Shown piece after piece: positions 31,160 to 49,034 of a stretch of 64,000 nt of DNA. The translations under genes were made by a program, and so were the position numbers. The DNA lies in IMG/VR virus record IMGVR_UViG_3300042455_001086, positions 186,001 to 250,000 of that record; one strand, 5' to 3'. The notes beneath the pieces are model-generated. The model ran no database searches. It was not told the DNA's origin and saw only the letters and a list, made by a program, of their open reading frames with translations. How positions within the stretch are numbered: the stretch's first letter is position 1; the number at the start of each line of letters is the position of its first letter.

Positions 31160-34100
31160 TTAATTAAATTTTACTTTTCCATCAAATGTTTTAAAATCAT
31201 TATTTAGATTTTGTGTCGAATATAAATCGACAATTCTATTATTTTGTTGGCTTGAACCACTTGTCGTTGAGGTATAGTTAAAAATATATTTGTCGGTTTC
31301 GTTTAATGGTGATTCTATTAATGATTTATATTTTTCATCGTCTTTTATTTTAGTATAGGAATCAATAATTTTTTGTGTATAACCATTAAATAATGTAACA
31401 CAAATAGTTATTGCTTTATCTAATTCTTTACTAATTATATCTTTATTTGTGAAAACCTGACTATTCAAAATAAATTCTTTAAGTGAATTTCTTTTAGATT
31501 CACTAAAGAAGGTTTGTGCCATAATCTGATAAAATCTATTTGTTGCATAGTCTTCATCTGTTGTTCCAACACCATTTGTCCAAGTAGCACCAGGAGTCCT
31601 AAAGGTATTATCTCTAAATAGAGCGTCAGATGGATTATAATGATCTTTAGCTAAAAATAAAAATTTATCTTGTTGTATAATATTTGTTGGTTCTTCAAAA
31701 AATGTTTTGTGTTTATCTTCAATTTTTTTATAGTTGTTTTTCAACAATGTAAATATATCAATTGGTGTTGTTTCGGCGGATAAATTATACGCAACCGGTT
31801 TATTTTCCGAATTTAATGAACCATCGGTTTTTGTTAAAATTAGGTTAAGTTTTCTAATATTCTGAATATAGTCTTGCTGGACATTTATAAGATTTGAAAT
31901 ATCGTTATTAAGATTTATTGAAAAATCTGACTGCATTGCTTCAATACTTTGAATTAGTCTTCTTTCAATTTCCTTTTTTTCTGAGTTTTTCAAATTAATA
32001 CTTTTGTCAATCTCTTCCATAAATGGATCTCTTCTTTTTTTAACATCTGAAATTGTTTCACTAAATAATTTATCAACCTTATTTTCTATTTTACTTGGTT
32101 TTCCATATATAGGTAAAGTTGATGAGGTTCCATATTCATCAAATTTACCTTCACTAAAATTTCTTTCATAGAATAATAAATAAACAATCCCAACATTAAA
32201 ATTTTTAGATAGGGTTATATGAGTATCAATTACAGTATCAAAATATTCTTTTGTTTTATTCCAAGTTTCATTTAATTGTTTTGTATAATCAATTTGTGTT
32301 TCGGATAAAATTGTTCCAATTGTATTTCCACCTTTTTTCGGTTGTATGTTTTCAACCTCGGCTGTTGTCACCGGTGGTTGTTGTGATAATATTTTCTCAA
32401 CAACATATTTGTCTCTAGCACTAACATCTTCAGTTGCTGTTGCTCTTTCATCATAAATTTCAGTATTTGCATAAAAATTAAATGAAAGTGCATTTTGTAA
32501 TTCCTCAACAGGTTGTTTTAATCCGTGACCACCAATAAAGTCAAAACCTAATGTAACTTTAACTATCATAGGTTGAACACCAATTCCTTCTGGATTTAAA
32601 TCATATTTAGCTTCTTCATATGCAAATGATAAGTTGCTAGGAACTATTTTACTATGGTAAAAATCCCCAACTCTTAATACTAAAATTGGTGGAGCACCAA
32701 ATGCTGTATTTAAAGCATCATTATATTTTGGTCTTCCATCGGCACCAATAATTGGTATTGTTTGTCCAGGTCTAACACATTGATTTAAAAATGTTAATCT
32801 ACCATTTAAACCTTCAGGTGTCATTGAATGGAAGGCCGGATTAAAATATTTAATCTTGTCTTTTAATGATTGAAAAATCATTGGGTCGGATTGTTTTAAC
32901 ACCTCAAAATAATCACATTCTGAAAATAAAGTTCTTAAAACTTTTTTAGATATACCATCTTTTATTTTTTGTTCTACCGTTATGTTTGGTGATGGTTTGA
33001 CTGTTTGTGCCGGATTAGTTTGAACATTTTCAACAACTTTCTTTTTTTCATCATTTTGTGGATCTGGCTCTTTATTTCCACCACCACCTTCTTTTTTTAC
33101 AGGTTCTTTTGCTTTAATGTTTTTAATCGTAACTCTTCTACAAGCCATAGCGGGTATTGAATATATCTCAGCAGCAGATGTAGTCTTATATGTGTTTCCA
33201 ACTTTTATATTCAAATTTGCATTACAATTTACACTATCTGATAATACACCTTGTTCACCAGACCCAACAACTGTAGGTCCACTTACCGCTTCGGCACTTG
33301 ATTTTGGTATCACAATTTCCTCACCTCTTGGATCTCCCTTTATAATAAGTTTTTTATTTGTGACATAGTCTTCAAAAGACTTACCATTTTTATCTTGTTG
33401 TTTTTTAAACCATTGAATTACTGAATCAATTCTTCTTTCTGATAATGTTTTATTATATGCTGGTGTTTGTACGGCTGATGCTGAACCAACCAAATCTATT
33501 GATACTTCACCACCATTTAATAAAATTTCACCAATTTTAGTTAAAAGATCACCTTTAATTTTATTGAAATTACCTTCAACAACTTGTGTAAAAAAGTTTG
33601 GAATACCAGCTTTACTCCATTCTTTATATGTTGTCCCTTCTTTGGTGTATGTAATTGCTGGTGCCGATGTATCATATTTACCTTTATTTCCGATATACCC
33701 ATCATACCAACTATCATATGGTTGGCTGGCGGTTTTACTCCAACTACCTTTACATTCAGGACAATCATTATCAAAATAAAATCCGTAGTTAATAAATTCA
33801 TCTAATGGAATATCTTTTATTGTGTCTGTTGTATTTTCTTTAGTTTTTGAACCACCACCGGTAGTAGCATTATCAGCACCAGTTGCATTGTTTTTTGCTT
33901 TATCTTCTTCTTCTGGTTTTTTTGGGATTTCAAAAGCAACTTGTCCTAATTCTTCTGATGTTAATCTTGGATTATTTAGGATTTGTTGATAGGTAAATAA
34001 ATCTCTTGTTGGAATTGTATTAAATTTAATACCTAATTCGTATAAATCATATTTTACACATCCAGCAAAAAAAGAATTAAGTATTGAGTCGACCAATTCT

Positions 34101-36211
34101 GGGTCAGCCTTTTTTAATTGTTTTTGGACAATTGTATTCATTACGGCTGGGTGATCCACAATTATTTTCCAGCTTAAACTTCCTTTTCTTGTTGTGTTTT
34201 TATATGTGTATATTGGTTCTGGTCTCCCTAAAAAAGATGTCTTATTAAATTCTGGCGAACTATCATCAGAAAATGTTAAATCGTAAGGTGGGAACCACAT
34301 AATTCTACCACCATTCGGTCCTCTTTCACAAACTGGTAAATCATCATATGTGAATCCAGGTCTATCTGATGTTCTCCAAGCAAGATTCTCAATTGAGAAC
34401 ATATATTTTTTTACTTTATTATCAACAATATTCGTTGATCCAGGATTTTTAAGTGGTGCAATATTCAAGTTGTATGTATTATCAAATATTGAATAAGAAA
34501 ACCCTCTACCTGTTTTTGTTATACCATCTGATTTTTGTAAATCGGCATAAGTGTAATATGGCGTATCTTTTGTAAAAACTCTACAATATTCAATCCCAAC
34601 TGAAGTATTGTCAGCATTGTCTTTGTAGGATAATACTTGTGAGCCTTTTGTTAGTTCTTTGTATCCATCATTAAATACTTTTGATACTTGGTTGATTGCG
34701 TTTCCAACATGTTTTAGTCTTGATAAACCGGTAACTTTGTCGGCAGATTCAACTAGTCTTTGTGTGTCGTCCAATATTGATCCTTCTTTGAAGGGAATCG
34801 TTGTTGATTGGTAACCTTGGTAATCTGCTCGTATTGTCTCAAATTGTTGATCTAAAGATGTTACTTTACCATTACGACCTTGTTTAAAACCTGCGTTGTC
34901 TTTATATTTCGGTGATGTCCAAACAAATTGTCCGGATATACCACCCCCATCACTAAGTGATTTACCCTTTAAACCATTTAATAATTTACTTTCATTTCCT
35001 TCATATAAAATACCCAATTCTTGTGGTCCATAAACAATTGTGTTAATTTGTTTTCCACCTGGTCCTACTGGTATTTGATTTGCTGGTGAGTCAATCTGTG
35101 ATGGTTCGGCTTCAGGGCTTCCAACATAATAACCACCAGTATTTGGTTTGTTTGGGTCTAAAATTCTATCAAGACCAGTTGTAATACTTTGTAATGGTCC
35201 TCTTACATATTTTGGTCTATATTTATTATAATCAAGAGATGAAAATAAAATTGATCTTTGTCCATTTCCGGTATTGGCAACAAATGTTTCTGAAGGATTT
35301 CTAAAAACATCAAGTATTGGTCCTAATAAACCACCAGTAACACCATTTACAACATTTAATGCTTTTTCAAGTTTTGGTGCTTGGAAATTAATGTCGTTAA
35401 AATAATCACCTGGGATTGTTGATGTTGGAAAATAAGTTCCTGATAATCTTAAACCAAATTCAACGGCAGCTTCAACTGGACTTTCAGATTGTGTTATTGT
35501 CCAGTTTTTATCAATAAAGGGTTCTTTACCTGCAGCAACCAAACTAGCACTAAAAGGATCTTCTAAAGAATCTAAATTTAATCTACCAATTGTTTTCTTT
35601 TTAAGTTGATCGGCAATTCTCTCCTCAAACGCACTCTTTAATTGTTGTGCTCCCAATCTAGCAAGGTATGTATCTTGAGATAATGAACCATTAGATCCAG
35701 ATGGATTTTGATTAAAAATTAAATCATATGTCTTATAAGTTGAAGCAACAAAGGATGATGGATCCCAATATGGTTGATAAAGTTTTGGATTTCCAACAAC
35801 ATCAGTAATTACCACTAAATCGGAATAACCACCTTGAGGTCCATAAATATTTTGAACATATGCCGCATCAATAAAAAATTCATTAATTAAGTCAAGAGTG
35901 GTGTCGTTTGGATCATAAGGTCCCGAATTTGAATCAACAGGATATGGTGACCCTGGTATTGAGTATTTTCCATTAAAACCACCTTCTGGTCCATATTCGT
36001 TTAATGGATATAATGTATTTGCAAATTGATTTGTGGATATTAAAGTATCTGATGAATCAATTACACTTGTTACTGTTAAATTTGTTTCATAATTTACATT
36101 AGTTGATGGGCTTGAGAATACACCTGGAACCGTATATGGTTTTAAGTTTCTAGCAATCAATTGATTTCTAAAACTTGATGAATTTGCAAACGACAATAAA
36201 CTTTCAGCCAT
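31160..36211 (-). CDS. Large tail-tube-initiator-like protein (1683 aa) with inserted OmpA-like domain
   Basis: Tube-initiator-like FLGRPEPIYTYKNTTRKGSLSWKIIVD and APPILVLRVGDFYHSK...QPMIVKVTLGF flank GSAS...YNKTLSERRIDSV...RGEE...CRRVTI; lies between tape measure and gp53-like genes. Confidence 0.6.
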   Translation of the reverse strand: MAESLLSFANSSSFRNQLIARNLKPYTVPGVFSSPSTNVNYETNLTVTSVIDSSDTLISTNQFANTLYPLNEYGPEGGFNGKYSIPGSPYPVDSNSGPYDPNDTTLDLINEFFIDAAYVQNIYGPQGGYSDLVVITDVVGNPKLYQPYWDPSSFVASTYKTYDLIFNQNPSGSNGSLSQDTYLARLGAQQLKSAFEERIADQLKKKTIGRLNLDSLEDPFSASLVAAGKEPFIDKNWTITQSESPVEAAVEFGLRLSGTYFPTSTIPGDYFNDINFQAPKLEKALNVVNGVTGGLLGPILDVFRNPSETFVANTGNGQRSILFSSLDYNKYRPKYVRGPLQSITTGLDRILDPNKPNTGGYYVGSPEAEPSQIDSPANQIPVGPGGKQINTIVYGPQELGILYEGNESKLLNGLKGKSLSDGGGISGQFVWTSPKYKDNAGFKQGRNGKVTSLDQQFETIRADYQGYQSTTIPFKEGSILDDTQRLVESADKVTGLSRLKHVGNAINQVSKVFNDGYKELTKGSQVLSYKDNADNTSVGIEYCRVFTKDTPYYTYADLQKSDGITKTGRGFSYSIFDNTYNLNIAPLKNPGSTNIVDNKVKKYMFSIENLAWRTSDRPGFTYDDLPVCERGPNGGRIMWFPPYDLTFSDDSSPEFNKTSFLGRPEPIYTYKNTTRKGSLSWKIIVDHPAVMNTIVQKQLKKADPELVDSILNSFFAGCVKYDLYELGIKFNTIPTRDLFTYQQILNNPRLTSEELGQVAFEIPKKPEEEDKAKNNATGADNATTGGGSKTKENTTDTIKDIPLDEFINYGFYFDNDCPECKGSWSKTASQPYDSWYDGYIGNKGKYDTSAPAITYTKEGTTYKEWSKAGIPNFFTQVVEGNFNKIKGDLLTKIGEILLNGGEVSIDLVGSASAVQTPAYNKTLSERRIDSVIQWFKKQQDKNGKSFEDYVTNKKLIIKGDPRGEEIVIPKSSAEAVSGPTVVGSGEQGVLSDSVNCNANLNIKVGNTYKTTSAAEIYSIPAMACRRVTIKNIKAKEPVKKEGGGGNKEPDPQNDEKKKVVENVQTNPAQTVKPSPNITVEQKIKDGISKKVLRTLFSECDYFEVLKQSDPMIFQSLKDKIKYFNPAFHSMTPEGLNGRLTFLNQCVRPGQTIPIIGADGRPKYNDALNTAFGAPPILVLRVGDFYHSKIVPSNLSFAYEEAKYDLNPEGIGVQPMIVKVTLGFDFIGGHGLKQPVEELQNALSFNFYANTEIYDERATATEDVSARDKYVVEKILSQQPPVTTAEVENIQPKKGGNTIGTILSETQIDYTKQLNETWNKTKEYFDTVIDTHITLSKNFNVGIVYLLFYERNFSEGKFDEYGTSSTLPIYGKPSKIENKVDKLFSETISDVKKRRDPFMEEIDKSINLKNSEKKEIERRLIQSIEAMQSDFSINLNNDISNLINVQQDYIQNIRKLNLILTKTDGSLNSENKPVAYNLSAETTPIDIFTLLKNNYKKIEDKHKTFFEEPTNIIQQDKFLFLAKDHYNPSDALFRDNTFRTPGATWTNGVGTTDEDYATNRFYQIMAQTFFSESKRNSLKEFILNSQVFTNKDIISKELDKAITICVTLFNGYTQKIIDSYTKIKDDEKYKSLIESPLNETDKYIFNYTSTTSGSSQQNNRIVDLYSTQNLNNDFKTFDGKVKFN

Positions 36212-38282: not shown

Positions 38283-38447
38283 TTATTGATTTTTTGGTGG
38301 TTGCAAATCTTCCAACAGCTTTTCTACAAGATATTTTCTAACATATGTTGGGATTGACAAAAATTCATTATATTGCATATGTATGTATTTTGCAAGATAA
38401 AAATATTCGTCCAATAAGAATTTTGAGTATTTAGAAGAAAGGCCGAA
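38283..38447 (-). CDS. Alternative-frame extension of the tail assembly chaperone (gpGT-like)
   Basis: Open frame FGLSSKYSKFLLDEYFYLAKYIHMQYNEFLSIPTYVRKYLVEKLLEDLQPPKNQ* starts at the T6C run inside the end of the upstream gene and stops just before the tape measure gene. Confidence 0.6.
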   Translation of the reverse strand, partial: FGLSSKYSKFLLDEYFYLAKYIHMQYNEFLSIPTYVRKYLVEKLLEDLQPPKNQ

Positions 38448-39195
38448 AAAATTCCACCCCAAAGGCGATATTTACATCTACCTTTTCTCCTGACGGGGCT
38501 ATAACAGTTCTTTTAAGATCCAATCTTGGTTCATTTTCTTTCATAAAGGATCTAATAAATTTAGAATCTCTAATCGGCATATTTTGGATGAAGGTAGAAA
38601 TCTTATTTTGGTCTTTATCCCCATTTAATTCAACAATCATTTTTGACAACCTTGTGGTGACAATTGGTGCATTATATCCAACTGGATATAGATCAACAAT
38701 TTTATCAATTTCCATTGTGTCAATTAAACTTAGTAATTTTAATTTGACATGAGCACCAGAAGTTGGTAATACAACTTCAAATAAACCTTCGCTATTTGGT
38801 TGAACTTTTGGTTGAATGATGTTCAACTCATCAAGCATAATTGAGGCTTCAAACGATTTTCCTGTTTTTGGGTCATTTACAACAATGTTATATTCCGGAC
38901 CAAATGATGTGTTTCTCAAAAATAAAAGAACGGCCTCAACATCACCCTCTAATAATTCTTCTGGTCTTATATCTCTTTCGTATAATTTATTTCTTAACAA
39001 AGGAATAATAATTGTTTCCTTTATTGTTTTTGTTCCGTCAATATTTACCAAGATATTTTCATCACTAGCAGTTAAATAACCAACTTTAACTGATTTCTTT
39101 TTTGATGTATAGAAAATACCATTTGATGGTAGTTGGACAATATCGTGTGGTAAATTAAAATCCATTTGTCCGTATGTTACTAAATCTTGATCCAT
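38431..39195 (-). CDS. Tail/baseplate assembly chaperone (T4 gp26-like)
   Basis: VQLPSNGIFY, YLTASDENIL, LLEGDVEAVLLFLRNTSFGPEY, C-terminal FGVEFFRP; upstream of the tape measure gene. Confidence 0.75.
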   Translation of the reverse strand: MDQDLVTYGQMDFNLPHDIVQLPSNGIFYTSKKKSVKVGYLTASDENILVNIDGTKTIKETIIIPLLRNKLYERDIRPEELLEGDVEAVLLFLRNTSFGPEYNIVVNDPKTGKSFEASIMLDELNIIQPKVQPNSEGLFEVVLPTSGAHVKLKLLSLIDTMEIDKIVDLYPVGYNAPIVTTRLSKMIVELNGDKDQNKISTFIQNMPIRDSKFIRSFMKENEPRLDLKRTVIAPSGEKVDVNIAFGVEFFRPFF

Positions 39196-39230: not shown

Positions 39231-40814
39231 TTAATCAATAGTTAATTCCCAACGAATATTTCCACAATCATATATCCTATAAATTTTTCTATCAAACATA
39301 ATTTGTTTTTCTGTTTTATCTTTATCATAACCCTCTTTCACCAGATTTGATTTATTAAAATTAAATCTATAATGTCTTTTATCACCAATTACATACCAAT
39401 AATTTGGTTTTGATTGTGAAATCATTTTAAAATTTAATTTCTCATACATTTTACCGTCAAAAATTCTAACATCAGAATATGATATTAACTTTTCTGGTTT
39501 ATATGTTGAAACAAAAGACTTTAATAATTTCGATGCCGATCCAATAACATTTGTGTTTATCTTATTACAAAATCTATTTAATTCCCATTCATCTTTTTTT
39601 CCTCCCATAATAATTCTACCTCTTGAAAATGTCATAAGTGATATTAATTCATCATTATGATATAGTCCTAGTTTTACACTTGAATTAACATTTCCCTGGA
39701 TGTGGTTTTCATCTAAAAACTTTTTAGATTCTGGTGTTGATACTTCTTTTATAATACACTTTCTAGCATATATCTTATTTTCACTAATGTTAAGTTTATT
39801 TTTTATAATTGATTTTACAATCTCTTTTTTATATATCCATTCGTCTTCAAAAATATGAACTAAACCAATTCCAAGATTATTACATTTAATCGTCTTTTCC
39901 AAATGATAATTTGGTGATTTAAATAATTCATTATGCCAATATAGACCATTGAACTCAAACCCCATTTTATACTCCGGAATAAATAAATCGACTTCAGCTT
40001 TTGAATTAGGTAATTTATAATTTGTTATGTGTGTGATATTAATCTCGGTTAAAAACTTGGAAATTTCTTCTTCATAACCACTCCTCTGACTAAAACCAAG
40101 CGGGTTACAATTTAAACAACATTCATAATTTCTTTTATGTCGTTCATACAGTAATTGTTTGGGAAGTTCGGATTCATTTTTACAAGTCGGACAAAAAATA
40201 ATAACCGAACCTTTTTTAACTTCCTTAAAACTAATATCTGGATATAAATTTTTAAAATCATTAATTAGTTTGTTTTTGTAATTATTTGATTTTGCATAAT
40301 TATCAACCCCATATTTTAACTCACAAGTTCTTTTTTGTTTATCAACATTATTGTAACTACTATTACCATAATTTATTTCTTTGGTTTTTTTACCCTTTTC
40401 AATATTATTGTAATTTTCATTACCGTATTTTTTTAATTTGGTTTCTTTTTGTTTTTTTATGAAATCATTATGTTGAGTGTAGAAATCAACACCATACTTT
40501 TTATTGAAAGTTTTCTTTTGTCTATTAATTAATTCGTCCTTTGAATTATTTGCACAAGTTAAGGAACAGAAATCACCGTATGGTTTATCAAATCTATTTC
40601 TAAATTTTATTTCATTGCCGCAAGATACGCATTTTGGTCTTTGTGTTAAATTATGAAAATAAAAATATATTTTTTCTTTAAAGGTTATATTGTCTTGGAT
40701 ATTTTTTGAATATTCAACTATTTTTGAATATAATTCTGGTTCATTATTATTTAACCATTTTTCATTGGTTTTATAACCAGATTTATTATTAGTTGTAAAA
40801 AAAGAAAAATCCAT
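39231..40814 (-). CDS. Hef-like free-standing endonuclease: Zn-finger, KYG repeats, Vsr/PD-(D/E)XK nuclease, Mom-like GNAT domain (copy 1)
   Basis: CxxC pairs, KKYGVD, EVDLFIPEYKMGFEFNGLYWH...HIFEDEW, then IYARKC...FLDENHIQG...ELNRFC...SASKLL...SYSD...IYDCG. Confidence 0.75.
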   Translation of the reverse strand: MDFSFFTTNNKSGYKTNEKWLNNNEPELYSKIVEYSKNIQDNITFKEKIYFYFHNLTQRPKCVSCGNEIKFRNRFDKPYGDFCSLTCANNSKDELINRQKKTFNKKYGVDFYTQHNDFIKKQKETKLKKYGNENYNNIEKGKKTKEINYGNSSYNNVDKQKRTCELKYGVDNYAKSNNYKNKLINDFKNLYPDISFKEVKKGSVIIFCPTCKNESELPKQLLYERHKRNYECCLNCNPLGFSQRSGYEEEISKFLTEINITHITNYKLPNSKAEVDLFIPEYKMGFEFNGLYWHNELFKSPNYHLEKTIKCNNLGIGLVHIFEDEWIYKKEIVKSIIKNKLNISENKIYARKCIIKEVSTPESKKFLDENHIQGNVNSSVKLGLYHNDELISLMTFSRGRIIMGGKKDEWELNRFCNKINTNVIGSASKLLKSFVSTYKPEKLISYSDVRIFDGKMYEKLNFKMISQSKPNYWYVIGDKRHYRFNFNKSNLVKEGYDKDKTEKQIMFDRKIYRIYDCGNIRWELTID

Positions 40815-40846
40815 ACATTTACTATTTCTAATAAATATATGGATTT
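40807..40846 (-). promoter_or_regulatory. Translational-repression hairpin covering the endonuclease start codon, with embedded TATTTAT motif
   Basis: RNA AAAUCCAUAUAUUUAUUA-GAAA-UAGUAAAUGUAUGGAUUU: 18 bp (2 G-U) with a GAAA tetraloop; the AUG at 40814 lies in the 3' arm. Confidence 0.7.
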
Positions 40847-40876
40847 ATATTTTGGTTGTAAAGGGTGTGTAAAAAA

Positions 40877-41365
40877 CTAATAAACTAAGATACAACGATC
40901 CATAACAATCGTGGAAGATATTGTTGAAACCTCATCTCCACCATATTTTAAAGATCCCCCATCGTATCCGGTAAGCCAAGCACCTTCAAGAATCCATTTT
41001 TCAACAACAACTCCTGTTGGATCTAACATTTCAAGATCAACATTTTTCTTATATCCAGCGGCATAACCCATACGACCAGTTACAGATTCAGCACAAGTTC
41101 TAATCCATTCCATAATAGCTTGTGTTGCAGACGGTCCGATTGGATCTCTAAATACAACAGGAAGTGATTCCCAATTAAATTTACCAGCAACATAAACCTC
41201 AGTATTTAAGAATGGGATTGGAACTGAATTTATTTTTAATTTTGGTCGTGATGTGCTTTCAACATACCATTCATTTATCCCCAAAGAAGAAGGGAATCTC
41301 AAGATCCACCTATTATTACGTTTAGGTTCGTAAGGGATAGGCATTTTCATTAATAAATCAGCCAT
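40877..41365 (-). CDS. Tail tube protein (T4 gp19-like)
   Basis: YEPKRNNRWIL, SRPK, YVAGKFNWE, YKKNVDLEMLDPTGVVVEKWILEGAW. Confidence 0.9.
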   Translation of the reverse strand: MADLLMKMPIPYEPKRNNRWILRFPSSLGINEWYVESTSRPKLKINSVPIPFLNTEVYVAGKFNWESLPVVFRDPIGPSATQAIMEWIRTCAESVTGRMGYAAGYKKNVDLEMLDPTGVVVEKWILEGAWLTGYDGGSLKYGGDEVSTISSTIVMDRCILVY

Positions 41366-41368
41366 TTT

Positions 41369-41400
41369 TTTGTTTTTTTTAATATTTATGTTTATATTTG
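41369..41400 (+). promoter_or_regulatory. Possible Bacteroidota-type housekeeping promoter
   Basis: TTTG (41369-72)-N20-TATATTTG (41393-400) matches TTTG-N19-21-TAnnTTTG, upstream of the + strand endonuclease; the low-complexity context lowers confidence. Confidence 0.35.
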
Positions 41401-41449
41401 TAAATTATATTATTTACATTACTCATAAATATCTTATAAAGTAAAAAAA

Positions 41450-43066
41450 ATGGATTTACTTAAATTTTTTATAGAAAATAATAATAGTGGTGCAAAAACT
41501 AAAGAATCTTTTTTAAAAAAAAATTATCCAGAGTTATATTTTGAAATAATTAACTACAATAACAACGATTTAATTGATTTACCCTTTAAACAAAAAATAT
41601 GGCACTACATCAATAAAATCCAAAATATACCAAAATGTCAGAATTGTGGTAATAATTTGAAATTTAAAAAATCATTAACTGAAGGTTATGGTTTATATTG
41701 TTCCGTTTTATGTGCCAACAAATGTGGAATAAGAAAAACAAAAATCAAAGAAACAAATATTGTTAAATACGGTGGAAACGCACCAATTTGTTCTGATGAT
41801 GTTAAAAATAAAATAAAAGAAAGTTTTATTAGATCATTTGGTGTTGATAATGTTTTTAAAGATAAAGAATATATAAAATCAAAAACAATAGAAAAACACA
41901 ATGTTGATCATATATCAAAACTTGATTCAACCAAAGAAAAAATAAAAAACACAAACCAAACTAAATACGGTGTTTCAACTCCTTTAGTTTTACCAGAAAT
42001 TAGACAAGTTGGGTTTGATAAAAAAACTGAATGGTTTTATTCTAAATATGAAAATTTAAATGTTATTGGTTATACCGGAAAAACAATTGAAATAAAATGT
42101 GATAAATGTAATCAACCTTATTTAATTGAGAGGTCTTTGCTGTCTTATAGATTTGAAAATGACATAAACCCTTGTATTTTGTGTAATCCAATAAATGATT
42201 TAAAATCATTTAAAGAAAAACAAATCTGTGAATTTTTAGATGAACATAATATTAAATATGTTGAAAATGACCGCAATATTCTTAAAGGTCAAGAATTAGA
42301 TATTTTTATACCAGAACATAATATTGCCATTGAATTTGACGGTTTGTTTTGGCATTCAGATAAATTTAAAGACAAACAATATCATAGTTTAAAAACAAAT
42401 GAATGTAAAAAACTAGGTATTAGAGTGGTTCATATTTTTGAAGATGAATGGGATAATAAAAAAGAAATTGTAAAAAGTAGAATTAAAACATTATTAGGTC
42501 TTACTAGTGTTCGTGTTTTTGCTAGAAATTGTGAAGTAAAATATGTCGACACACAAACAAAAACAAAATTCTTGGAAGAAAACCATATCCAGGGCTCAGT
42601 TGGTAGTAAATTTAATTTAGGTTTATATTACAATTCAAATTTAATATCTATAATGACATTTGGTAAAAAAAGATTAAATCTTGGATATAAAAAAACAGAA
42701 AACAATGAATATGAATTACTTCGTTTTTGTAATAAACTAAACCACATTGTTGTTGGGGGTGCGTCTAAGCTACTTAAAAGGTTTATCGTTGATCAATCAC
42801 CAAAAGAAATTATAAGTTATGCTGATAAGAGGTGGAGTAATGGTAATTTATATGAGAAGTTGAACTTTTCTTTTGTAAAAGAAACAACACCGAATTATTA
42901 CTATGTCGTTAATAAAAAAAGAGAATCAAGATTCAAATACAGAAAAGATGTTTTGGTTGATTTGGGATATGATTCAAATAAAAGTGAATTTGAGATAATG
43001 GAAGAAAGAGGTATTCCAAAAATTTATGATTGTGGAAATCTATTATACAAAAAATCCCTAAAGTAA
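41450..43066 (+). CDS. Hef-like endonuclease with Mom-like GNAT domain (copy 2)
   Basis: Same architecture as copy 1: ELDIFIPEHNIAIEFDGLFWHS...HIFEDEW; VFARNC...FLEENHIQG...ELLRFC...GGASKLL...ISYAD...IYDCG. Confidence 0.75.
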   Translation: MDLLKFFIENNNSGAKTKESFLKKNYPELYFEIINYNNNDLIDLPFKQKIWHYINKIQNIPKCQNCGNNLKFKKSLTEGYGLYCSVLCANKCGIRKTKIKETNIVKYGGNAPICSDDVKNKIKESFIRSFGVDNVFKDKEYIKSKTIEKHNVDHISKLDSTKEKIKNTNQTKYGVSTPLVLPEIRQVGFDKKTEWFYSKYENLNVIGYTGKTIEIKCDKCNQPYLIERSLLSYRFENDINPCILCNPINDLKSFKEKQICEFLDEHNIKYVENDRNILKGQELDIFIPEHNIAIEFDGLFWHSDKFKDKQYHSLKTNECKKLGIRVVHIFEDEWDNKKEIVKSRIKTLLGLTSVRVFARNCEVKYVDTQTKTKFLEENHIQGSVGSKFNLGLYYNSNLISIMTFGKKRLNLGYKKTENNEYELLRFCNKLNHIVVGGASKLLKRFIVDQSPKEIISYADKRWSNGNLYEKLNFSFVKETTPNYYYVVNKKRESRFKYRKDVLVDLGYDSNKSEFEIMEERGIPKIYDCGNLLYKKSLK

Positions 43067-43080
43067 AATTTAGGGATTTT
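43051..43080. terminator. Bidirectional terminator between convergent genes
   Basis: 12-bp inverted repeat AAAATCCCTAAA/TTTAGGGATTTT. Confidence 0.65.
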
Positions 43081-43146
43081 AAAAATTTTTCTATTTACTT
43101 TGGATTATTTTTGAGTATTCATATATTATATATAACTTAATATATT

Positions 43147-43980
43147 TTAATATTTAGTTTTCTTTCCTCCTGCTGTTAAATAAGTTTGTAATATATTATC
43201 TTTCTTTTTATCAAAATGACTTTTCATCTTTTCTACATTTCTTACATCATCATCTGAAAAACCAATAAATGGTGTAAAATAATTTGAAATTTTATTTTTC
43301 ATAAATGCTTTTTTCTGTAATCTATGTGATAATAGTTTTACATATCTAACGAACTCTTCCATAGCATCAATTTTTCCTTGCTCCGGATTCGTTGCCGAAC
43401 CTTCACCAAATGATACCGGGTGGAATCTACACATATCTAAATATATATCTACAAGTTCATCATCCGTTAAATCTTCTTCATCTGCAAGGTCTCTATATTT
43501 TTTAAGATTTTTAACTAATTCAGATTTACTTAAACCGTGTTTATTTGAATTAATTAATCTATGAACCGCTTCCTTTAAAATTGAAGGTGTATGCCCTCTA
43601 GCTGTGACGATTGCAAAGATTGAACCATTATTTATTGCTTCCACAAAATCAGACCACGCTGGTCCTGTTGGAGCTTTCATTGCATCAGTTAAGAACTTAT
43701 TATCTCCAGTCACTCTAAAGTCTCTAAATGGATCTTCATCAAAACCAACAATTGTATTTCCTTTATAGTTAAAGGGTTCTTTTCCGATTTCAGTTCTATA
43801 CTCAGCAAAATCTTCTGTCGACATACCAACTGGTTTTCCATTATCATCCTTCAGATAAATTTTTGTCGGCATAAACATCAAATTATCATCCCAATCAAAA
43901 GCATAATATTTCATTGTTGGTGATGAGGTTTCATCAATTATTTCATTGATTAATTTTTTTATGTATTTTTTCTGATTCAT
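43147..43980 (-). CDS. HAD-superfamily phosphatase-like protein
   Basis: Motif I AFDWDDN, motif II IVTARGH, Lys in GKIDA, motif IV GFSDDD. Confidence 0.7.
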   Translation of the reverse strand: MNQKKYIKKLINEIIDETSSPTMKYYAFDWDDNLMFMPTKIYLKDDNGKPVGMSTEDFAEYRTEIGKEPFNYKGNTIVGFDEDPFRDFRVTGDNKFLTDAMKAPTGPAWSDFVEAINNGSIFAIVTARGHTPSILKEAVHRLINSNKHGLSKSELVKNLKKYRDLADEEDLTDDELVDIYLDMCRFHPVSFGEGSATNPEQGKIDAMEEFVRYVKLLSHRLQKKAFMKNKISNYFTPFIGFSDDDVRNVEKMKSHFDKKKDNILQTYLTAGGKKTKY

Positions 43981-44005
43981 AACAATAAATATTGATTATA
44001 ATAAA

Positions 44006-44030
44006 AAAAGGGAGAACTTGTCTCCCTTTT
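44006..44030 (-). terminator. Rho-independent terminator
   Basis: AAAAGGGAGA-ACTTG-TCTCCCTTTT just after the endonuclease copy 3 stop. Confidence 0.7.
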
Positions 44031-44033
44031 CCT

Positions 44034-45557
44034 TTAATTTATTTTCAATTCAAATTTTAACGAACCACAATCCCATATCCTATCATATTTTTTTAATTTC
44101 ATAATTTCCCATTCTGTTAATTCTTTATTGTAACCTTCTTTGACTAAAACATCTTTCCTAAACGAAAATCTATGTGATCTATTTAAATATCTTTCTGTGT
44201 TTATATACCAATAATTTGGTGGTGTTTGTTTTACGAAATTAAAACCATTTTTAAAATACACAGTTTTTGTTTGATCTAAACCAGACCATCGAATATCAGC
44301 AAATGTTTCTATTTTAGATGGATTATATTTTTTAATGAAGTTCTTTAATAGTTTAGAAAATCCACCAATAATTGTTAAATTAATTTTATTACAAAATCTA
44401 ACTAACTCATATTCTGAATTATCCCTATTATCATTACCTAATGATTTTCTTTTTTTTCCAAATGTCATAACAGAAACTAATTCATCATTATAAAATAGAC
44501 CAAATCTAACCTTATCTATCGAATTTCCTTGTAAATGGTTATTTGTTAAAAACAATGAGGATTCTTTTTTTGGAATTTCTTTTATTTCACATTTTCTGGC
44601 GAAAATTTTATTACTCAATTCTAATTTATTTTTTAATTTTGACAACACAATATCTTTCTTTAATAAGATTTCATCTTCATAAAATTGAATGAGGGTGATT
44701 CCTTTATCATAACAAAGTTTTGTTTTATCAATATGATAATTTTTTGTTTTTTCACCACTTATTTCAGAATGGTAATAATTACCATTAACCTCAATTCCAA
44801 TATTATAATCCGGTAAATAAATATCTATTTCTCTACCATTTAGTATTTTTCTATCACCATCAATATGTTTAACACCTATACTATTTAGATAATCTTTAAT
44901 TATTTGTTCCAGTTTTGAATTTTTAATAATTGGGTAACACTTACGACATATCGGAATTTTACCAGAACCTAAAATTGTGCTACTAAAGATATTGTCACAT
45001 TTACAACATTTAAACATATAAGGTTGTGATGTTTTACCACTTTTATTAGCCACATATGTATCTAATATCTCAAGATTATTTTCATTTAATTTTGGTAGTA
45101 AATTTAATAAATGTTTATCTCTCAATGTTGATTTTAATTTGTCGACAAATTCCGGAACTAACATTGGGGATTTAACTCCGTATTTTTTCATAAAAATACT
45201 CTCATACGACTCTTTGAATTCTTTTGTTTTAAACAAACTATCAACCCCATATTTTTGACGGAGTGTGTTCTTCGATTTGCCTAACCGATATTCAATATGT
45301 TTAGGATTTGAGTTCCATAATATTCTACATTCTTCCGAACATATTTTTTTCTGATGTTTCTTCCTTTCTTCAAATTCTTTACCACATTGAACGCAAGTTC
45401 TTATTTCTCTAACATTAGAGTCTTTCGTCTTACCAAGTAATTTATTCTTTCTAGCGTAGTTAAAATAACAACTTCTATCACAAAATTTCTTATCTCTGTG
45501 TTTAAAATCAGTAATAAATGATTTATTACAAGATAAACATTCTAATTCAACTTTCAT
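44034..45557 (-). CDS. Hef-like endonuclease with Mom-like GNAT domain (copy 3)
   Basis: Two CxxC...FC/ICxxxC Zn modules, KYGV repeats, EIDIYLPDYNIGIEVNGNYYHS...QFYEDE, IFARKC...NHLQG...ELVRFC...IWDCG; likely start MKVELEC at 45557. Confidence 0.75.
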   Translation of the reverse strand: MKVELECLSCNKSFITDFKHRDKKFCDRSCYFNYARKNKLLGKTKDSNVREIRTCVQCGKEFEERKKHQKKICSEECRILWNSNPKHIEYRLGKSKNTLRQKYGVDSLFKTKEFKESYESIFMKKYGVKSPMLVPEFVDKLKSTLRDKHLLNLLPKLNENNLEILDTYVANKSGKTSQPYMFKCCKCDNIFSSTILGSGKIPICRKCYPIIKNSKLEQIIKDYLNSIGVKHIDGDRKILNGREIDIYLPDYNIGIEVNGNYYHSEISGEKTKNYHIDKTKLCYDKGITLIQFYEDEILLKKDIVLSKLKNKLELSNKIFARKCEIKEIPKKESSLFLTNNHLQGNSIDKVRFGLFYNDELVSVMTFGKKRKSLGNDNRDNSEYELVRFCNKINLTIIGGFSKLLKNFIKKYNPSKIETFADIRWSGLDQTKTVYFKNGFNFVKQTPPNYWYINTERYLNRSHRFSFRKDVLVKEGYNKELTEWEIMKLKKYDRIWDCGSLKFELKIN

Positions 45558-45626
45558 CGGTAAAATATATTTAATAGTTATGAGTATGTCTCTACAAATA
45601 AATATACGAAGATAATATAAAAAAAC

Positions 45627-45657
45627 AAAATCCCCCAAAAAAAATTTGAGGGATTTT
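45627..45657 (-). terminator. Terminator downstream of the sheath gene
   Basis: AAAATCCCTCAAA...TTTGGGGGATTTT stem on the minus strand followed by a T-rich run. Confidence 0.6.
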
Positions 45658-45680
45658 ACTTTTAATCTATTTTGTTTTCA

Positions 45681-48600
45681 CTAAATATTATCAAAAGATG
45701 CACCAGTTGGTGTAATATAGAAGGTAATATCTATAAATTCTAACGAACGAGTTGGTTTAATATAGATTTTACCAGTCAATTGATTTCTATCTAAATCAGC
45801 AGTATCACTTGACACCTCAACTCGGAAATCATATAGACCTCTATCTCTTCTAATAGCATCCAAGATTGGATTAACCGCATTCAAGAAATCTTGTCTTACT
45901 TGTTCATCATTTTGGTCAAACAACAATCTTACAGAAACCGCTGAAATTAACTTACGAGCTTGTAATAACAATCTTCTCACATTAATTCTATCAAGTGCGG
46001 ATTCTCTAACTTGAAGGGTTTTGTTACCCCAGATTACAGTTCCAACATCAGCAAATGTTGCAATTGGGTTGATTCTACCAACATAAAGAACATCTCTATC
46101 TTCTTGAGTTAATTTCTTACGAGCTTTAACCGCATTTACAATACCACGAGTATAACCAGCTGCCGCAAACCAAGGGAATGCAATATTATCTGTAAGTGCC
46201 AAGTTTCTTGTAACCTCAGCCGTTGCTGGGATGTAAATTTGTGTATTATTTACAGTATCTCTTGTTAATACCCAAGGATAATATGTTGCAGTATAGTTAG
46301 AATCAATTCCAGTTTCTTCCAAATTATCAACAGCTTCTTGTGGATAAATTAAATTATCACCTTCAGTTGTTGATGCTACAAACATATTATAGTCTGGTGT
46401 TGTTGTAATGTATAATGAATCCGCTCTATCATTCTCAATCATATCAATAGTAGCTTCAACTAAATCACTATTATTTACATAATCAATCCCTGGTGATACA
46501 AATACATTAATATTAACAGCTTCAGGATTAGCAAATGTTCTAATACCAAGTAAATACGCGTAGTAATCGGTGTTTGCATAATCCATAGTCTGGTCACCAA
46601 CGGCAATTTGTTTAAATGCACCCCATCCTTTAGCAGTTGGGTATCTGTCTGACACACAAGCACCATTTAAGAATCCTTGACGACCTAATACAAATCTATC
46701 ACCATTTGTTCTATATTCTCTATAAATATCCCAACCATCAAATCCACCATTAACAAATAAAGTGAATTTTCTTGAGAATAATCTGTAATATGGACTATCT
46801 GGACTTGTAGGTTCAGAAGAGAATGCGGCCGCACCTACATAATATTTAGGAGTTCCACTTGTTGCAAATGCACTTGAAATTGTAATTCCACTTGCAAATT
46901 GATCCATATGGAAACCTTTCGTTTTGTATGACCATTCACCACCTTCCAAATCACAAGTTGAGATAGGTGCTCTTTTTCCTTTATATTCAAAGAAACTTGT
47001 GTCAAAACCAATATTACTTGACATACCAAGGTAAGTTTTTCTAATATTGTCACCAGAAGTTCTAATTGCATCATCAGCACCTGAAGCCAAACCAAATGGT
47101 GGGTTATATATTACTTCACCTGGGAAATCATATTTGGTCTTATAAACTGGGAATGGAGATTTAACACCAACATATTCTCTAAATACATAACCGTCAAATC
47201 CACAAGGAAGTGCATCAACTGGCGCATCTTCGTTCATTTCAACCATAATGTATTTAGAATTCATTTCAAATTCACCGTCTAATGTTCCGATTTTTTTAGC
47301 AATAAAGTTATTTTGTGATGGATCCATAGAACAGTTTGTAAATTTCTCAATAACAACCGGATTTGAATCAACATCAAAATAATCCCTAACTAATACATCA
47401 AATGTTCTATTAGCAAATGAGATATTGATAATTGAGATTTTAACCTCACTATTTGCGGAATTACCATCAGAAATAGTGTAGAACTTGAATAAGTTAAATG
47501 TTTTCGTACCTCTCAATTCTGATACAACCCAAGGAGATGATGGCGATTGGAATTTTTCTAAATACCAACCGATTGTATTTGGATCTTCACTTTGAGCCGA
47601 ATCAAGGGCTGTAAGTTCAGCACTTAAACCTCTGATATAACCTTTTCTCCAACCATAATTTAATAACGCTTGGAATCTTTCTTCCAAGAATAATGGAGTT
47701 GATGTTCTTGGTTTCCCAAAGTTAGTTCCACCAAATACTTTTGCGATATATTGTGAATCTGATTGACTAAACGATGTTTCAAAAATAAAGTTAGTTCCAG
47801 AATCGTTTGTTACATTTACAGCAAATGGTAAATATGGGTTTTTAAGAACTCCAGAATATTGACCTGACATATTAAGAGTAACATTTGAAATATCAGAAAC
47901 TTCAAATACTGGATTATTTTCATCTGAATATGTTGCAATACCTCTTGATCTTAATGTTGCAACAACCAAATCGTCATAATCTGTATATGTCACACCAGAA
48001 TAATAATATAGTGTTCCTACTAACATACCTTCAAAACATCTAACATTTACTGGTATTGGAGTTGGTGCCGGTGTAGTAGTTGGAGTTGGTGTAATACAAG
48101 GATTTGTAGGTGTTGGTGTAGGTGTTGCACTCGGAGTAGGTGTAGGTGTCGGTACAATTGGGAAAACTTCAGTTAAACCAGACACAAATGTGTAGAATGA
48201 AAACCCTGAATATAATCCATTATTTGTATTATTAAATAAAGCATAATACCAAGCATCATTAAATGGTGATGTATAATCCGTTAAATCACTTGATGGTGAT
48301 GGAACATTAAATACATTTGTTTCAGCTGAATAACCAAGACTAACTAAACTATCATAGTCATCACCCCAAATTGAACCATAGTAGTTAATATTTCTAGTTT
48401 GAGCTGTAAGTGGATCTCCATTATCTGTAATAATATTAAAGATTTGATCTCTAATGTTAGTATCAAGTGTTGAAATTGAACCATCAAAGTTTTCGTATTG
48501 TTGTAATAAGAATTCATTGGTTAATGGACTAGGTAATGAGTCATATATGATACTATCTTCAGAATTAGTGCAAGCTGTAAATGGAACCATAAATGTAATT

Positions 48601-49034
48601 GCACTTGGTATAACACAAATAGTATCACACACATTATTCGGATCTGTTATTGCACTAAGACATAAGAAATCAACTGTTTTAGGATCAACATTTGCTTTGG
48701 TTACGATAGACCAAGATGGACCAGCGTCATAACCGGATAAACCCAATATTCTTGTAACAAATAATTGGTTTGATTGTTGTAAATATGCTTTTGCGATATA
48801 AGACGCTTCATATTTAGGAATTTGTGTATTCACAAATTTTTCTGGTGAAGTTCCACCAAAGTAGGTTTGGAATTCATCATAGTTTCTAATAAAAATTGGT
48901 TCAAAAGCAGGACCCTTTAAAGTCTCTCCTGCAATACCCAAAGTTGTAACACCAACACTTTGTGCAACAAAGCTTAGATCAACTTCTGAAGTATAAACCC
49001 CTGGTGAAACAAATATTTTACTGTTAGTTGCCAT
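45681..49034 (-). CDS. Contractile tail sheath protein (T4 gp18-like, 1117 aa)
   Basis: FVSPGVYTSEVDLS, GETLKGPAFEP, YYPWV, PWFAAAGYTRG, INPI, WGNKTL, RINVRRL, IKPTRSLEFIDITF. Confidence 0.95.
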   Translation of the reverse strand: MATNSKIFVSPGVYTSEVDLSFVAQSVGVTTLGIAGETLKGPAFEPIFIRNYDEFQTYFGGTSPEKFVNTQIPKYEASYIAKAYLQQSNQLFVTRILGLSGYDAGPSWSIVTKANVDPKTVDFLCLSAITDPNNVCDTICVIPSAITFMVPFTACTNSEDSIIYDSLPSPLTNEFLLQQYENFDGSISTLDTNIRDQIFNIITDNGDPLTAQTRNINYYGSIWGDDYDSLVSLGYSAETNVFNVPSPSSDLTDYTSPFNDAWYYALFNNTNNGLYSGFSFYTFVSGLTEVFPIVPTPTPTPSATPTPTPTNPCITPTPTTTPAPTPIPVNVRCFEGMLVGTLYYYSGVTYTDYDDLVVATLRSRGIATYSDENNPVFEVSDISNVTLNMSGQYSGVLKNPYLPFAVNVTNDSGTNFIFETSFSQSDSQYIAKVFGGTNFGKPRTSTPLFLEERFQALLNYGWRKGYIRGLSAELTALDSAQSEDPNTIGWYLEKFQSPSSPWVVSELRGTKTFNLFKFYTISDGNSANSEVKISIINISFANRTFDVLVRDYFDVDSNPVVIEKFTNCSMDPSQNNFIAKKIGTLDGEFEMNSKYIMVEMNEDAPVDALPCGFDGYVFREYVGVKSPFPVYKTKYDFPGEVIYNPPFGLASGADDAIRTSGDNIRKTYLGMSSNIGFDTSFFEYKGKRAPISTCDLEGGEWSYKTKGFHMDQFASGITISSAFATSGTPKYYVGAAAFSSEPTSPDSPYYRLFSRKFTLFVNGGFDGWDIYREYRTNGDRFVLGRQGFLNGACVSDRYPTAKGWGAFKQIAVGDQTMDYANTDYYAYLLGIRTFANPEAVNINVFVSPGIDYVNNSDLVEATIDMIENDRADSLYITTTPDYNMFVASTTEGDNLIYPQEAVDNLEETGIDSNYTATYYPWVLTRDTVNNTQIYIPATAEVTRNLALTDNIAFPWFAAAGYTRGIVNAVKARKKLTQEDRDVLYVGRINPIATFADVGTVIWGNKTLQVRESALDRINVRRLLLQARKLISAVSVRLLFDQNDEQVRQDFLNAVNPILDAIRRDRGLYDFRVEVSSDTADLDRNQLTGKIYIKPTRSLEFIDITFYITPTGASFDNI
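48050..48163 (-). repeat. Pro-Thr repeat insertion in the sheath
   Basis: PIVPTPTPTPSATPTPTPTNPCITPTPTTTPAPTPIPV. Confidence 0.85.

What the first reader, a model, noticed from the sequence alone, without database searches (positions are those of the whole stretch)
39231..45557. Three nuclease + Mom-like acyltransferase paralogs bracketing the tube and sheath genes
Seen: three diverged ~510-540-aa genes within 6.4 kb share a Vsr-like PD-(D/E)XK domain and a conserved C-terminal domain (NH(I/L)QG, MTF, ELxRFC, SKLL, (S/T)(Y/F)xD, DCG). Their Zn-finger and KYG-repeat N-termini differ. Known: free-standing homing endonucleases cut neighbouring conserved genes, and Mu Mom is a GNAT-fold DNA-modifying enzyme with a similar motif order. 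Inference: a one-polypeptide cut-and-modify selfish element that may mark and protect its own genome, with swappable DNA-binding modules retargeting it to different tail genes.
Basis: partly seen in the sequence, partly recalled or inferred. Interest (0 to 1): 0.7.

Follow-up and report, generated by a model that had tools for sequence, protein, structure and literature searches.

The report
Three Hef-type homing endonucleases with Mom domains
Three selfish 'homing endonuclease' genes of the known phage Hef family have inserted between the tail genes of an uncultured 257-kb phage, and each still carries an apparently intact copy of the DNA-modifying Mom enzyme domain, whose role in such genes has never been tested.

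Summary
Three ORFs (39231-40814 -, 41450-43066 +, 44034-45557 -) are paralogs with three parts:
- a divergent N-terminus of Zn-ribbons and KYG repeats (DUF7487), 21-30% identical among the three;
- a Vsr-like nuclease, 40-49% identical;
- a C-terminal Mom-family GNAT domain, 47-49% identical.

They belong to the known Hef-type (EDxHD/Vsr-like) free-standing homing endonucleases (PHROG 3339, E 1e-112 to 1e-126). The nuclease matches I-Bth0305I (3r3p). The best Foldseek match to a solved structure is Mu Mom (8bv8).

All four residues essential in Mu Mom (R111, S124, D149, R151), plus H58 and Y159, are present in all three copies. dN/dS of the Mom domain is 0.08-0.15.

Among 80 related phage contigs, about 70 have sheath-orf277-tube-hub with short spacers and no such gene. 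Only the closest relatives carry one or two of the three, at the same intergenic spots. Sequence flanking the third gene's site looks co-converted. So the genes are mobile, not fixed.

The 'cut-and-modify' idea is plausible but unproven, and it is not new. Iyer et al. 2021 already described jumbo-phage Mom domains fused to restriction-fold nucleases. Taylor et al. 2011 already placed Hef in the EDxHD family. Verdict: new members of a known kind; the function of the Mom domain remains open.

The parts
39231..40814 (-). HefA: 527-aa Hef-type homing endonuclease. N-terminal helices, Zn-ribbon and KYG repeats (DUF7487); second Zn-ribbon; Vsr-like nuclease at about 243-342; Mom-family domain at about 343-527. 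Inserted in the tube-hub spacer.
   Evidence: Present only in L007, L012 and L013 among the relatives. Replaces the tube terminator hairpin seen at empty sites.
41450..43066 (+). HefB: 538-aa Hef-type homing endonuclease, on the strand opposite to all the tail genes. Inserted in the orf277-tube spacer.
   Evidence: AF2 model pLDDT 89.6. Foldseek hits 8bv8 and 3r3p. Present only in L007, L012 and L013. Own terminator-like hairpin at 43051-43080.
44034..45557 (-). HefC: 507-aa Hef-type homing endonuclease with a different N-terminus (two Zn-fingers, fewer repeats).
   Evidence: Present only in L006 and L008. Absent from L007 (96% sheath identity) and from all other relatives.
44046..45679 (-). 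The approximately 1634-bp block, carrying HefC and an upstream hairpin, that is inserted immediately after the sheath stop codon and before the original sheath terminator.
   Evidence: Alignment with the empty sites of L010 and L013. Hairpins at 45663-45621 and 44006-44030.
45681..49034 (-). Tail sheath gene (1117 aa), a conserved neighbour. Its last approximately 150 nt are part of the divergent tract flanking the HefC site.
   Evidence: phrog_23. Identity profile against L007.
43147..43980 (-). orf277, a conserved tail-module gene of unknown function lying between HefC and HefB. Its first approximately 600 nt are only 83-85% identical to L007, against 93-100% beyond.
40877..41365 (-). Tail tube gene (gp19-like), flanked by HefB and HefA.
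   Evidence: phrog_4542 and PF06841.
38431..39195 (-). Baseplate hub-like gene (T4_baseplate), downstream neighbour of HefA.
   Evidence: phrog_150 and PF12322.

Best explanation
The three genes are free-standing, mobile homing-endonuclease genes of the Hef type. This family has an EDxHD / Vsr-like nuclease and was first described in phage U5, where Hef cleaves nrdB. Each gene has inserted independently into an intergenic spacer of the conserved tail module: sheath|orf277, orf277|tube and tube|hub.

Proposed mechanism:
- Inferred from family knowledge: in a mixed infection, the variable N-terminal Zn-ribbon and KYG-repeat array binds a long site in or beside the neighbouring tail gene of a phage that lacks the element.
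- Inferred: the Vsr-like domain then cuts that DNA.
- Indirectly shown here: recombinational repair copies the gene, together with flanking donor sequence, into the recipient.
- Shown here: the C-terminal domain belongs to the Mom family and is kept under purifying selection with the Mom catalytic constellation intact.
- Inferred, not shown: the likeliest role of this domain is a catalytic or base-flipping engagement of DNA next to the cut. Plausibly it acylates adenine N6 and so marks or immunises the carrier genome's own sites.
For: Family assignment:
- PHROG 3339 'homing endonuclease' matches full length, E 1e-112 to 1e-126.
- A T4-like member (phage FL44) sits between nrdA and nrdB, directly upstream of nrdB. 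That is the mobE slot, where the title of the Hef paper places hef (reference 33) and beside the nrdB gene that Hef cleaves (PMC2988022).
- Taylor 2011 places Hef in the EDxHD family.

Nuclease domain:
- The family profile hits 3r3p at E 1.4e-5. Foldseek gives TM 0.79 and 26% identity.
- D284, E295, H302 and K315 are invariant in 148 of 148 diverse representatives.

Mom domain:
- Foldseek rank 1 is 8bv8, E 3.3e-8.
- VIA gives Z 12.9 over 160 residues, against about 130 for generic GNATs.
- hhalign gives 94% probability, E 1.2e-7. It aligns H58, R111, S124, D149, R151 and Y159 with H379, R425, S439, D459, R461 and Y468.
- These residues are present in all three copies.
- R111 is specific to Mom and is not a general GNAT residue (PMC7261163).

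Selection: dN/dS is 0.05-0.19 in every domain.

Mobility:
- About 70 of 80 relatives have empty sites.
- HefC occurs only in L006 and L008. HefA and HefB occur only in L007, L012 and L013. L009 and L010 have none, although their sheath identity equals that of L012 and L013.
- The insertion boundaries are clean.
- Identity to L007 falls to 80-85% just around the HefC site but is 95-100% elsewhere.
Against: - No cleavage, homing or modification was measured, and no target site could be identified. Differences between alleles with and without the genes are scattered across the tube gene.
- Family-wide, the R151 equivalent is kept in only 64% of representatives and the S124 equivalent in 82%. Mom-type catalysis may therefore not be universal in the family.
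- Mom Y59 and the dimer residue W48 are not conserved.
- Flank mosaicism can also arise from ordinary recombination.
Confidence: 0.85

Rival explanations
1. One-polypeptide restriction-modification-like weapon, as in the model of Iyer et al. 2021. The Mom domain broadly modifies the phage's own adenines. The nuclease degrades unmodified host DNA or the DNA of superinfecting phages. The genes would then serve defence or competition rather than homing.
For: The model was published for the jumbo-phage Mom-REase fusions (PMC7824862). Both the nuclease and the Mom catalytic residues are intact. The genome has several copies and no stand-alone Mom gene.
Against: The genes show presence/absence at exact intergenic sites among near-identical relatives, and the flanks are divergent. 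That is the signature of site-specific homing, not of a fixed defence gene. A family member, Hef of U5, is reported to cleave a specific gene, nrdB. The long, variable DNA-binding N-termini argue for long specific sites.
Confidence: 0.15
2. The Mom-like domain is not a transferase here. It would be a structural module that engages DNA, flips a base or mediates oligomerisation so that the nuclease can make a double-strand break. Immunity of the carrier genome would come only from disruption or divergence of the target site.
For: The R151 and S124 equivalents are replaced in 36% and 18% of family representatives. Mom is a tight dimer (PMC13219725), and the EDxHD enzyme I-Bth0305I relies on dimerisation. 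Insertion sites are intergenic, so insertion itself could destroy a target.
Against: H379, Q381, R425 and Y468 are invariant in 148 of 148 representatives, and the full Mom essential set is present in all three copies. dN/dS is 0.08-0.15. That degree of conservation is typical of an active site. The dimer residue W48 is not conserved. The homodimer prediction gave no answer.
Confidence: 0.3
3. The three genes are fixed, domesticated accessory genes of the tail module, for example regulators, and are no longer mobile.
For: All three reading frames are intact and under purifying selection.
Against: About 70 of 80 relatives lack all three. Close relatives differ in which of the three they carry.
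Confidence: 0.03

Closest known systems
Hef of T-even phage U5 and 'Hef-like' free-standing homing endonucleases (PHROG 3339; phages Acj9, LIMEstone1, Campylobacter phages CP220 and CP30A)
   Same: Full-length homology. The genes are free-standing and sit beside conserved genes, including tail tube genes in LIMEstone1 and CP30A. Genomes often carry several copies.
   Different: These are new, diverged members, at most about 41% identical to any deposited phage record. They come from an uncultured 257-kb phage. Three copies cluster within 6.4 kb of the tail module.
I-Bth0305I, prototype of the EDxHD (Vsr-like) homing endonucleases (PDB 3r3p)
   Same: The same nuclease fold, with equivalents of E170, D196 and H213 (E256, D284, H302). 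In both, an N-terminal modular DNA-binding region precedes the nuclease.
   Different: I-Bth0305I is intron-encoded, uses NUMOD motifs and has no Mom domain. The position aligned with its D222 is an invariant His (H312) here, though the alignment there is uncertain.
Mom of phage Mu (PF25680; PDB 8bv8), a Gly-tRNA-dependent adenine-N6 modifying GNAT
   Same: GNAT fold with a helical insertion between the last strands. Equivalents of H58, R111, S124, D149, R151 and Y159 are conserved.
   Different: Only about 15-20% identical. Y59 and the dimer residue W48 are not conserved. The loop before helix 3 reads GGAS, closer to the canonical GNAT pyrophosphate loop, so the acyl donor may differ. The domain is fused to a nuclease and has no com-type regulator.
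Jumbo-phage Mom-REase fusions described by Iyer, Anantharaman, Krishnan, Burroughs and Aravind 2021
   Same: The same architecture and a modify-self/cut-other model. The PA5oct-like phage Callisto has five matching places.
   Different: That paper treats them as restriction-modification-like conflict systems. The evidence here (sporadic intergenic insertion, flank mosaicism) shows behaviour typical of homing elements.

Membership tests
Hef-type / EDxHD homing endonucleases | Vsr-like nuclease fold with the conserved acidic and His catalytic residues | tested here: met
   Profile against 3r3p gives E 1.4e-5. Foldseek gives TM 0.79. E256, D284, E295 and H302 are present in all three copies. D284, E295 and H302 are invariant in 148 of 148 representatives.
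Hef-type / EDxHD homing endonucleases | Full-length sequence membership in the Hef family | tested here: met
   PHROG 3339 matches at E 1e-112 to 1e-126 over the whole length. A homolog lies in the nrdA-nrdB slot of a T4-like phage.
Hef-type / EDxHD homing endonucleases | Free-standing gene with sporadic distribution at a fixed intergenic site among close relatives | tested here: met
   80 relatives were compared. About 70 sites are empty, and the closest relatives carry different subsets of the three genes. Boundaries were mapped.
Hef-type / EDxHD homing endonucleases | Co-conversion of flanking markers | tested here: inconclusive
   Identity to L007 drops to 80-85% only around the HefC site. 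This fits co-conversion but does not prove it.
Hef-type / EDxHD homing endonucleases | Site-specific double-strand cleavage of the allele that lacks the gene, and super-Mendelian inheritance | not testable with these tools
   Needs in vitro cleavage assays and mixed-infection crosses.
Mom family (PF25680) | GNAT fold closest to Mu Mom | tested here: met
   Foldseek rank 1 is 8bv8_A, E 3.3e-8. VIA gives Z 12.9 with the longest alignment, 160 residues.
Mom family (PF25680) | Score over Pfam's curated cut-off (27.1 bits) | tested here: inconclusive
   Protein scan: HefB 29.3 (over), HefA 24.8 and HefC 21.2 (under). Six-frame scan: 30.8, 28.2 and 23.4 bits. hhalign against a Mom-family profile gives 94% probability, E 1.2e-7.
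Mom family (PF25680) | Essential residues R111, S124, D149 and R151 (PMC13219725) | tested here: met
   They align with R425, S439, D459 and R461 and are present in HefA, HefB and HefC. Family-wide conservation is R 100%, S 82%, D 91% and R 64%.
Mom family (PF25680) | HTH-like insertion between strands beta-6 and beta-7, essential in Mu Mom | tested here: inconclusive
   The model has helices at 494-519 between strands 490-493 and 524-536. The VIA alignment runs to Mom residue 222. The sequence profiles do not align across this region.
Mom family (PF25680) | Dimerisation through W48 | tested here: not met
   W48 aligns with a non-conserved polar residue. The homodimer prediction gave no answer.
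Mom family (PF25680) | Transfer of glycine from Gly-tRNA to adenine N6 in double-stranded DNA | not testable with these tools
   Needs expression followed by LC-MS or SMRT analysis.

The most novel reading that the evidence does not exclude
The Mom domain of Hef-type homing endonucleases is an active DNA adenine acyl- or aminoacyl-transferase. It marks the element's own recognition sites, or the carrier genome at large. Immunity to self-cleavage would then come from modification rather than from target-sequence divergence. That would make these genes single-polypeptide hybrids of a homing endonuclease and a restriction-modification system. It would also make homing endonucleases, not Mu-like prophages, the main natural home of Mom chemistry: more than 22,000 protein clusters at 50% identity match the module.
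Probability: 0.3. Interest if true: 0.75.

Novelty: new member of a known kind. Interest (0 to 1): 0.4.

Why it matters
These genes are ordinary in kind. Hef-like homing endonucleases are common in large phages, and their Vsr-like nuclease and fused Mom domain have both been described.

The open question is what a conserved, apparently catalytic Mom domain does inside a homing endonuclease. Mom's chemistry and assays are now established: Gly-tRNA is the donor and a crystal structure exists (8bv8). That makes the question directly testable.

This locus is a convenient natural system for the test:
- it offers three paralogs with different DNA-binding heads;
- natural empty-site alleles are available as candidate substrates;
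- a Mom-less nuclease-only relative sits at the same hotspot in a sister phage.

The nuclease-Mom module hits about 22,800 cluster representatives at 50% identity. Whatever the Mom domain does is therefore widespread in phage genome dynamics.

Tried and rejected
- megablast of the region against deposited phages found no match.
- Single-sequence phmmer of each half of HefB against PDB sequences found nothing meaningful. A family profile was needed to reach 3r3p, and a structure search was needed to reach 8bv8.
- hhalign of the family profile against the single Mu Mom sequence was weak (29% probability). It became convincing only with a Mom-family profile.
- I looked for target sites as fixed differences between alleles with and without the genes in the tube gene. 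The differences are scattered with no cluster, so no target is proposed.
- An apparent degenerate direct repeat of the post-stop spacer at both ends of the HefC block is not significant. 27 of 500 shuffles reach its score, so it was dropped.
- Complex prediction on a homodimer of residues 250-538 of HefB returned 'no answer'. This is not evidence either way.
- The window holds no tRNA genes, so there is no phage-encoded tRNA-Gly link here.
- The original Hef paper (PMC1275590) and Iyer et al. 2009 (PMC2995806) are not held in the library. Statements about them rest on citing papers.
- The idea that the genes are fixed in the lineage is rejected.
Full report
**What is there**

The window is bases 186001-250000 of a 257,166-bp IMG/VR virus record of about 30% G+C. 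The flagged interval holds three ORFs:
- HefA, 39231-40814 (-), 527 aa
- HefB, 41450-43066 (+), 538 aa
- HefC, 44034-45557 (-), 507 aa

The names are mine.

The neighbouring genes are as follows:
- tail sheath, 45681-49034, 1117 aa
- a conserved 277-aa gene of unknown function, 43147-43980
- gp19-like tail tube, 40877-41365
- T4-baseplate-like hub protein, 38431-39195

All tail genes are on the minus strand. HefB alone is on the plus strand.

The three proteins align over their whole length. Pairwise identity among them is 21-30% in the N-terminal approximately 250 residues, 40-49% in the next approximately 100, and 47-49% in the last approximately 190.

Pfam finds DUF7487 in the N-terminus and Mom (PF25680) in the C-terminus of all three. 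In the middle, HefA and HefB hit MTES_1575 weakly (HefB also Vsr), and HefC hits only PvuRts1I-like_N. Only HefB exceeds the Mom curated cut-off in the protein scan. HefA and HefB both exceed it in a six-frame scan.

A fourth paralog (578 aa) lies outside the window, directly downstream of the major head protein gene. The genome has no stand-alone Mom gene.

**What family it is**

All three match PHROG 3339 'homing endonuclease' end to end, E 1e-112 to 1e-126. tblastn finds relatives in 418 deposited phage genomes. These include Campylobacter phages with up to 12 places per genome, Acinetobacter T4-like phages annotated 'Hef-like homing endonuclease', Lak megaphages and PA5oct-like Pseudomonas jumbo phages.

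In the T4-like phage FL44 the homolog lies between nrdA and nrdB. That is the mobE slot, where the title of the Hef paper places hef (reference 33). Hef of phage U5 is reported to cleave nrdB (PMC2988022).

Hef-like genes next to tail tube genes are already on record in LIMEstone1 (PMC3296691) and are seen in CP30A.

**The nuclease domain**

A profile of 40 family members hits the catalytic domain of the intron homing endonuclease I-Bth0305I (3r3p) at E 1.4e-5. An AlphaFold2 model of HefB (pLDDT 89.6) superposes on 3r3p with TM 0.79 at 26% identity.

Taylor et al. 2011 defined the 'EDxHD' Vsr-like family on this enzyme and explicitly included phage Hef proteins (PMC3239194).

The equivalents of E170, D196 and H213 are E256, D284 and H302. 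D284, E295, H302 and K315 are invariant in 148 of 148 diverse cluster representatives.

**The Mom domain**

- The top Foldseek PDB match of the whole model is the crystal structure of Mu Mom (8bv8_A, E 3.3e-8), ahead of generic GNATs.
- VIA-align gives Z 12.9 over 160 aligned residues, reaching Mom residue 222. Ordinary GNATs align over about 130 residues.
- A profile-profile comparison of the family's C-terminal domain with a Mom-family alignment gives 94% probability, E 1.2e-7.

That alignment pairs the Mu Mom residues with HefB residues as follows:

| Mu Mom | HefB |
|---|---|
| H58 | H379 |
| R111 | R425 |
| S124 | S439 |
| D149 | D459 |
| R151 | R461 |
| Y159 | Y468 |

R111, S124, D149 and R151 are the residues whose mutation abolishes or greatly reduces Mom activity (PMC13219725). 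R111 is specific to Mom rather than general to GNATs (PMC7261163). All six residues are present in HefA, HefB and HefC.

Not conserved are Y59 (Ile or Leu here) and the dimer residue W48.

The model has a helical insertion between the last strands, where Mom has its essential HTH-like insertion. The sequences do not align there, so that point stays open.

The loop before helix 3 reads G-G-A-S, closer to the classical GNAT pyrophosphate loop than Mom's own. By my inference, the acyl donor therefore need not be Gly-tRNA.

**Is the domain maintained?**

dN/dS between orthologs in the window and in relatives L012, L013 and L007 is 0.05-0.19 in all three domains. For the Mom domain it is 0.08-0.15.

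An exhaustive search with the nuclease-Mom module finds 22,784 cluster representatives at 50% identity with E up to 1e-3, and 10,948 with E up to 1e-30. In the best 150 the module is always C-terminal and complete, behind N-terminal extensions of about 0 to 750 residues.

In 148 of these, H379, Q381, R425 and Y468 are invariant. The S124 equivalent is kept in 82%, the D149 equivalent in 91%, and the R151 equivalent in only 64%, being Ser in 26%. A conserved pocket is therefore certain, but strict Mom-type catalysis across the whole family is not.

**Mobility**

Using the sheath protein I fetched 80 related viral contigs with 72-100% sheath identity and mapped the window's genes on them. The pattern was:

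| Relatives | Sheath identity | Hef genes carried |
|---|---|---|
| About 70 contigs | 72-89% | none; order is sheath-orf277-tube-hub-p664-p1683 with spacers of about 70-130 bp |
| L006, L008 | 96-100% | HefC |
| L007 | 96% | HefB (99% identical) and HefA (93%), but no HefC |
| L012, L013 | 88% | HefB and HefA, but no HefC |
| L009, L010 | 88% | none |

The insertion points are as follows:
- The HefC block is a clean insertion of about 1634 bp (window 44046-45679), immediately after the sheath stop codon and before the original terminator.
- HefB sits in the orf277-tube spacer.
- HefA replaces the tube terminator hairpin.

Against L007, nucleotide identity is 95-100% over most of the module. 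It falls to 80-92% in the last 300 nt of the sheath gene and to 83-85% in the first 600 nt of orf277, the two flanks of the HefC site. That is what co-conversion of donor flanks during homing would leave, although ordinary recombination could do the same.

L007 also carries an extra 311-aa gene between tube and HefA. It has a C2H2 zinc finger, NUMOD3-like repeats and a Vsr-like nuclease, but no Mom domain. The tail module is thus a hotspot for homing endonuclease genes, and a Mom-less relative exists beside the Mom-bearing ones.

Within HefA, dS against L007 is 0.45 over the N-terminus and nuclease but 0.03 over the Mom domain. A recombination breakpoint therefore lies inside the gene. This fits modular exchange of the DNA-binding part.

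**How it most likely works**

- Shown: the architecture, the family membership, the intact catalytic residues in both enzymatic domains, purifying selection, and sporadic intergenic presence among close relatives.
- Inferred from the family: the N-terminal array binds a long DNA site; the nuclease cuts alleles lacking the gene during co-infection; repair copies the gene.
- Inferred without direct support: the Mom domain modifies an adenine, or at least flips one into its pocket, at or near the site, and so may immunise the carrier genome.

I give 0.85 to 'mobile Hef-type homing endonuclease genes'. I give roughly 0.4-0.5 to 'the Mom domain is a working transferase on DNA' and 0.3 to the full self-immunity-by-modification model.

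**Comparison with what is known, and novelty**

Iyer et al. [quoted passage not shown]

This analysis adds that, in this lineage, the genes behave as homing elements rather than as fixed defence genes. It also shows that the residues essential in Mu Mom's crystal structure are kept.

I found no paper that tests the Mom domain of any Hef protein.

These are therefore new members of a known kind. The unresolved role of the Mom domain gives the locus moderate interest.

Noticed in passing
L004:1480-3216 (-), = G000:C1 about 6186-7922, outside the window: A fourth Hef paralog (578 aa) lies directly downstream of the major head protein gene. It is the only one of 40 aligned family members with Asn instead of the nuclease catalytic His (H302 equivalent), while its Mom residues are intact.
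   Followed up: partly
L007:16566-17501 (+): A close relative carries an additional 311-aa gene between tube and HefA. It has a C2H2 zinc finger, NUMOD3-like repeats and a Vsr-like nuclease, but no Mom domain. It is a second kind of homing endonuclease gene at the same hotspot.
   Followed up: partly
L023, L026, L028, L030-L032, L039 (between orf277 and hub254): In these relatives no tail tube gene was detected between orf277 and the hub gene. Only about 200 bp lie there, and no tube match appears elsewhere in the fetched flanks.
   Followed up: no
window 39231-40814 compared with L007:17562-19142: A recombination breakpoint lies inside HefA. Synonymous divergence is 0.45 over the N-terminus and nuclease but 0.03 over the Mom domain, and the hub gene beyond it is 99% identical.
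   Followed up: partly
L004:85-1386 (-), outside the window: A 433-aa phage protein has a signal peptide and a C-terminal stretch that, from memory and untested with tools, resembles a type IX secretion sorting domain. This hints at a Bacteroidota host.
   Followed up: no
window 45681-49034, 24120-30845, 6179-11509, 31160-36211: The sheath protein is very long (1117 aa), and only its last approximately 300 residues match sheath families. The same strand carries several giant ORFs (2241, 1776 and 1683 aa); the 1683-aa one had no PHROG match, and the other two were not searched.
   Followed up: no
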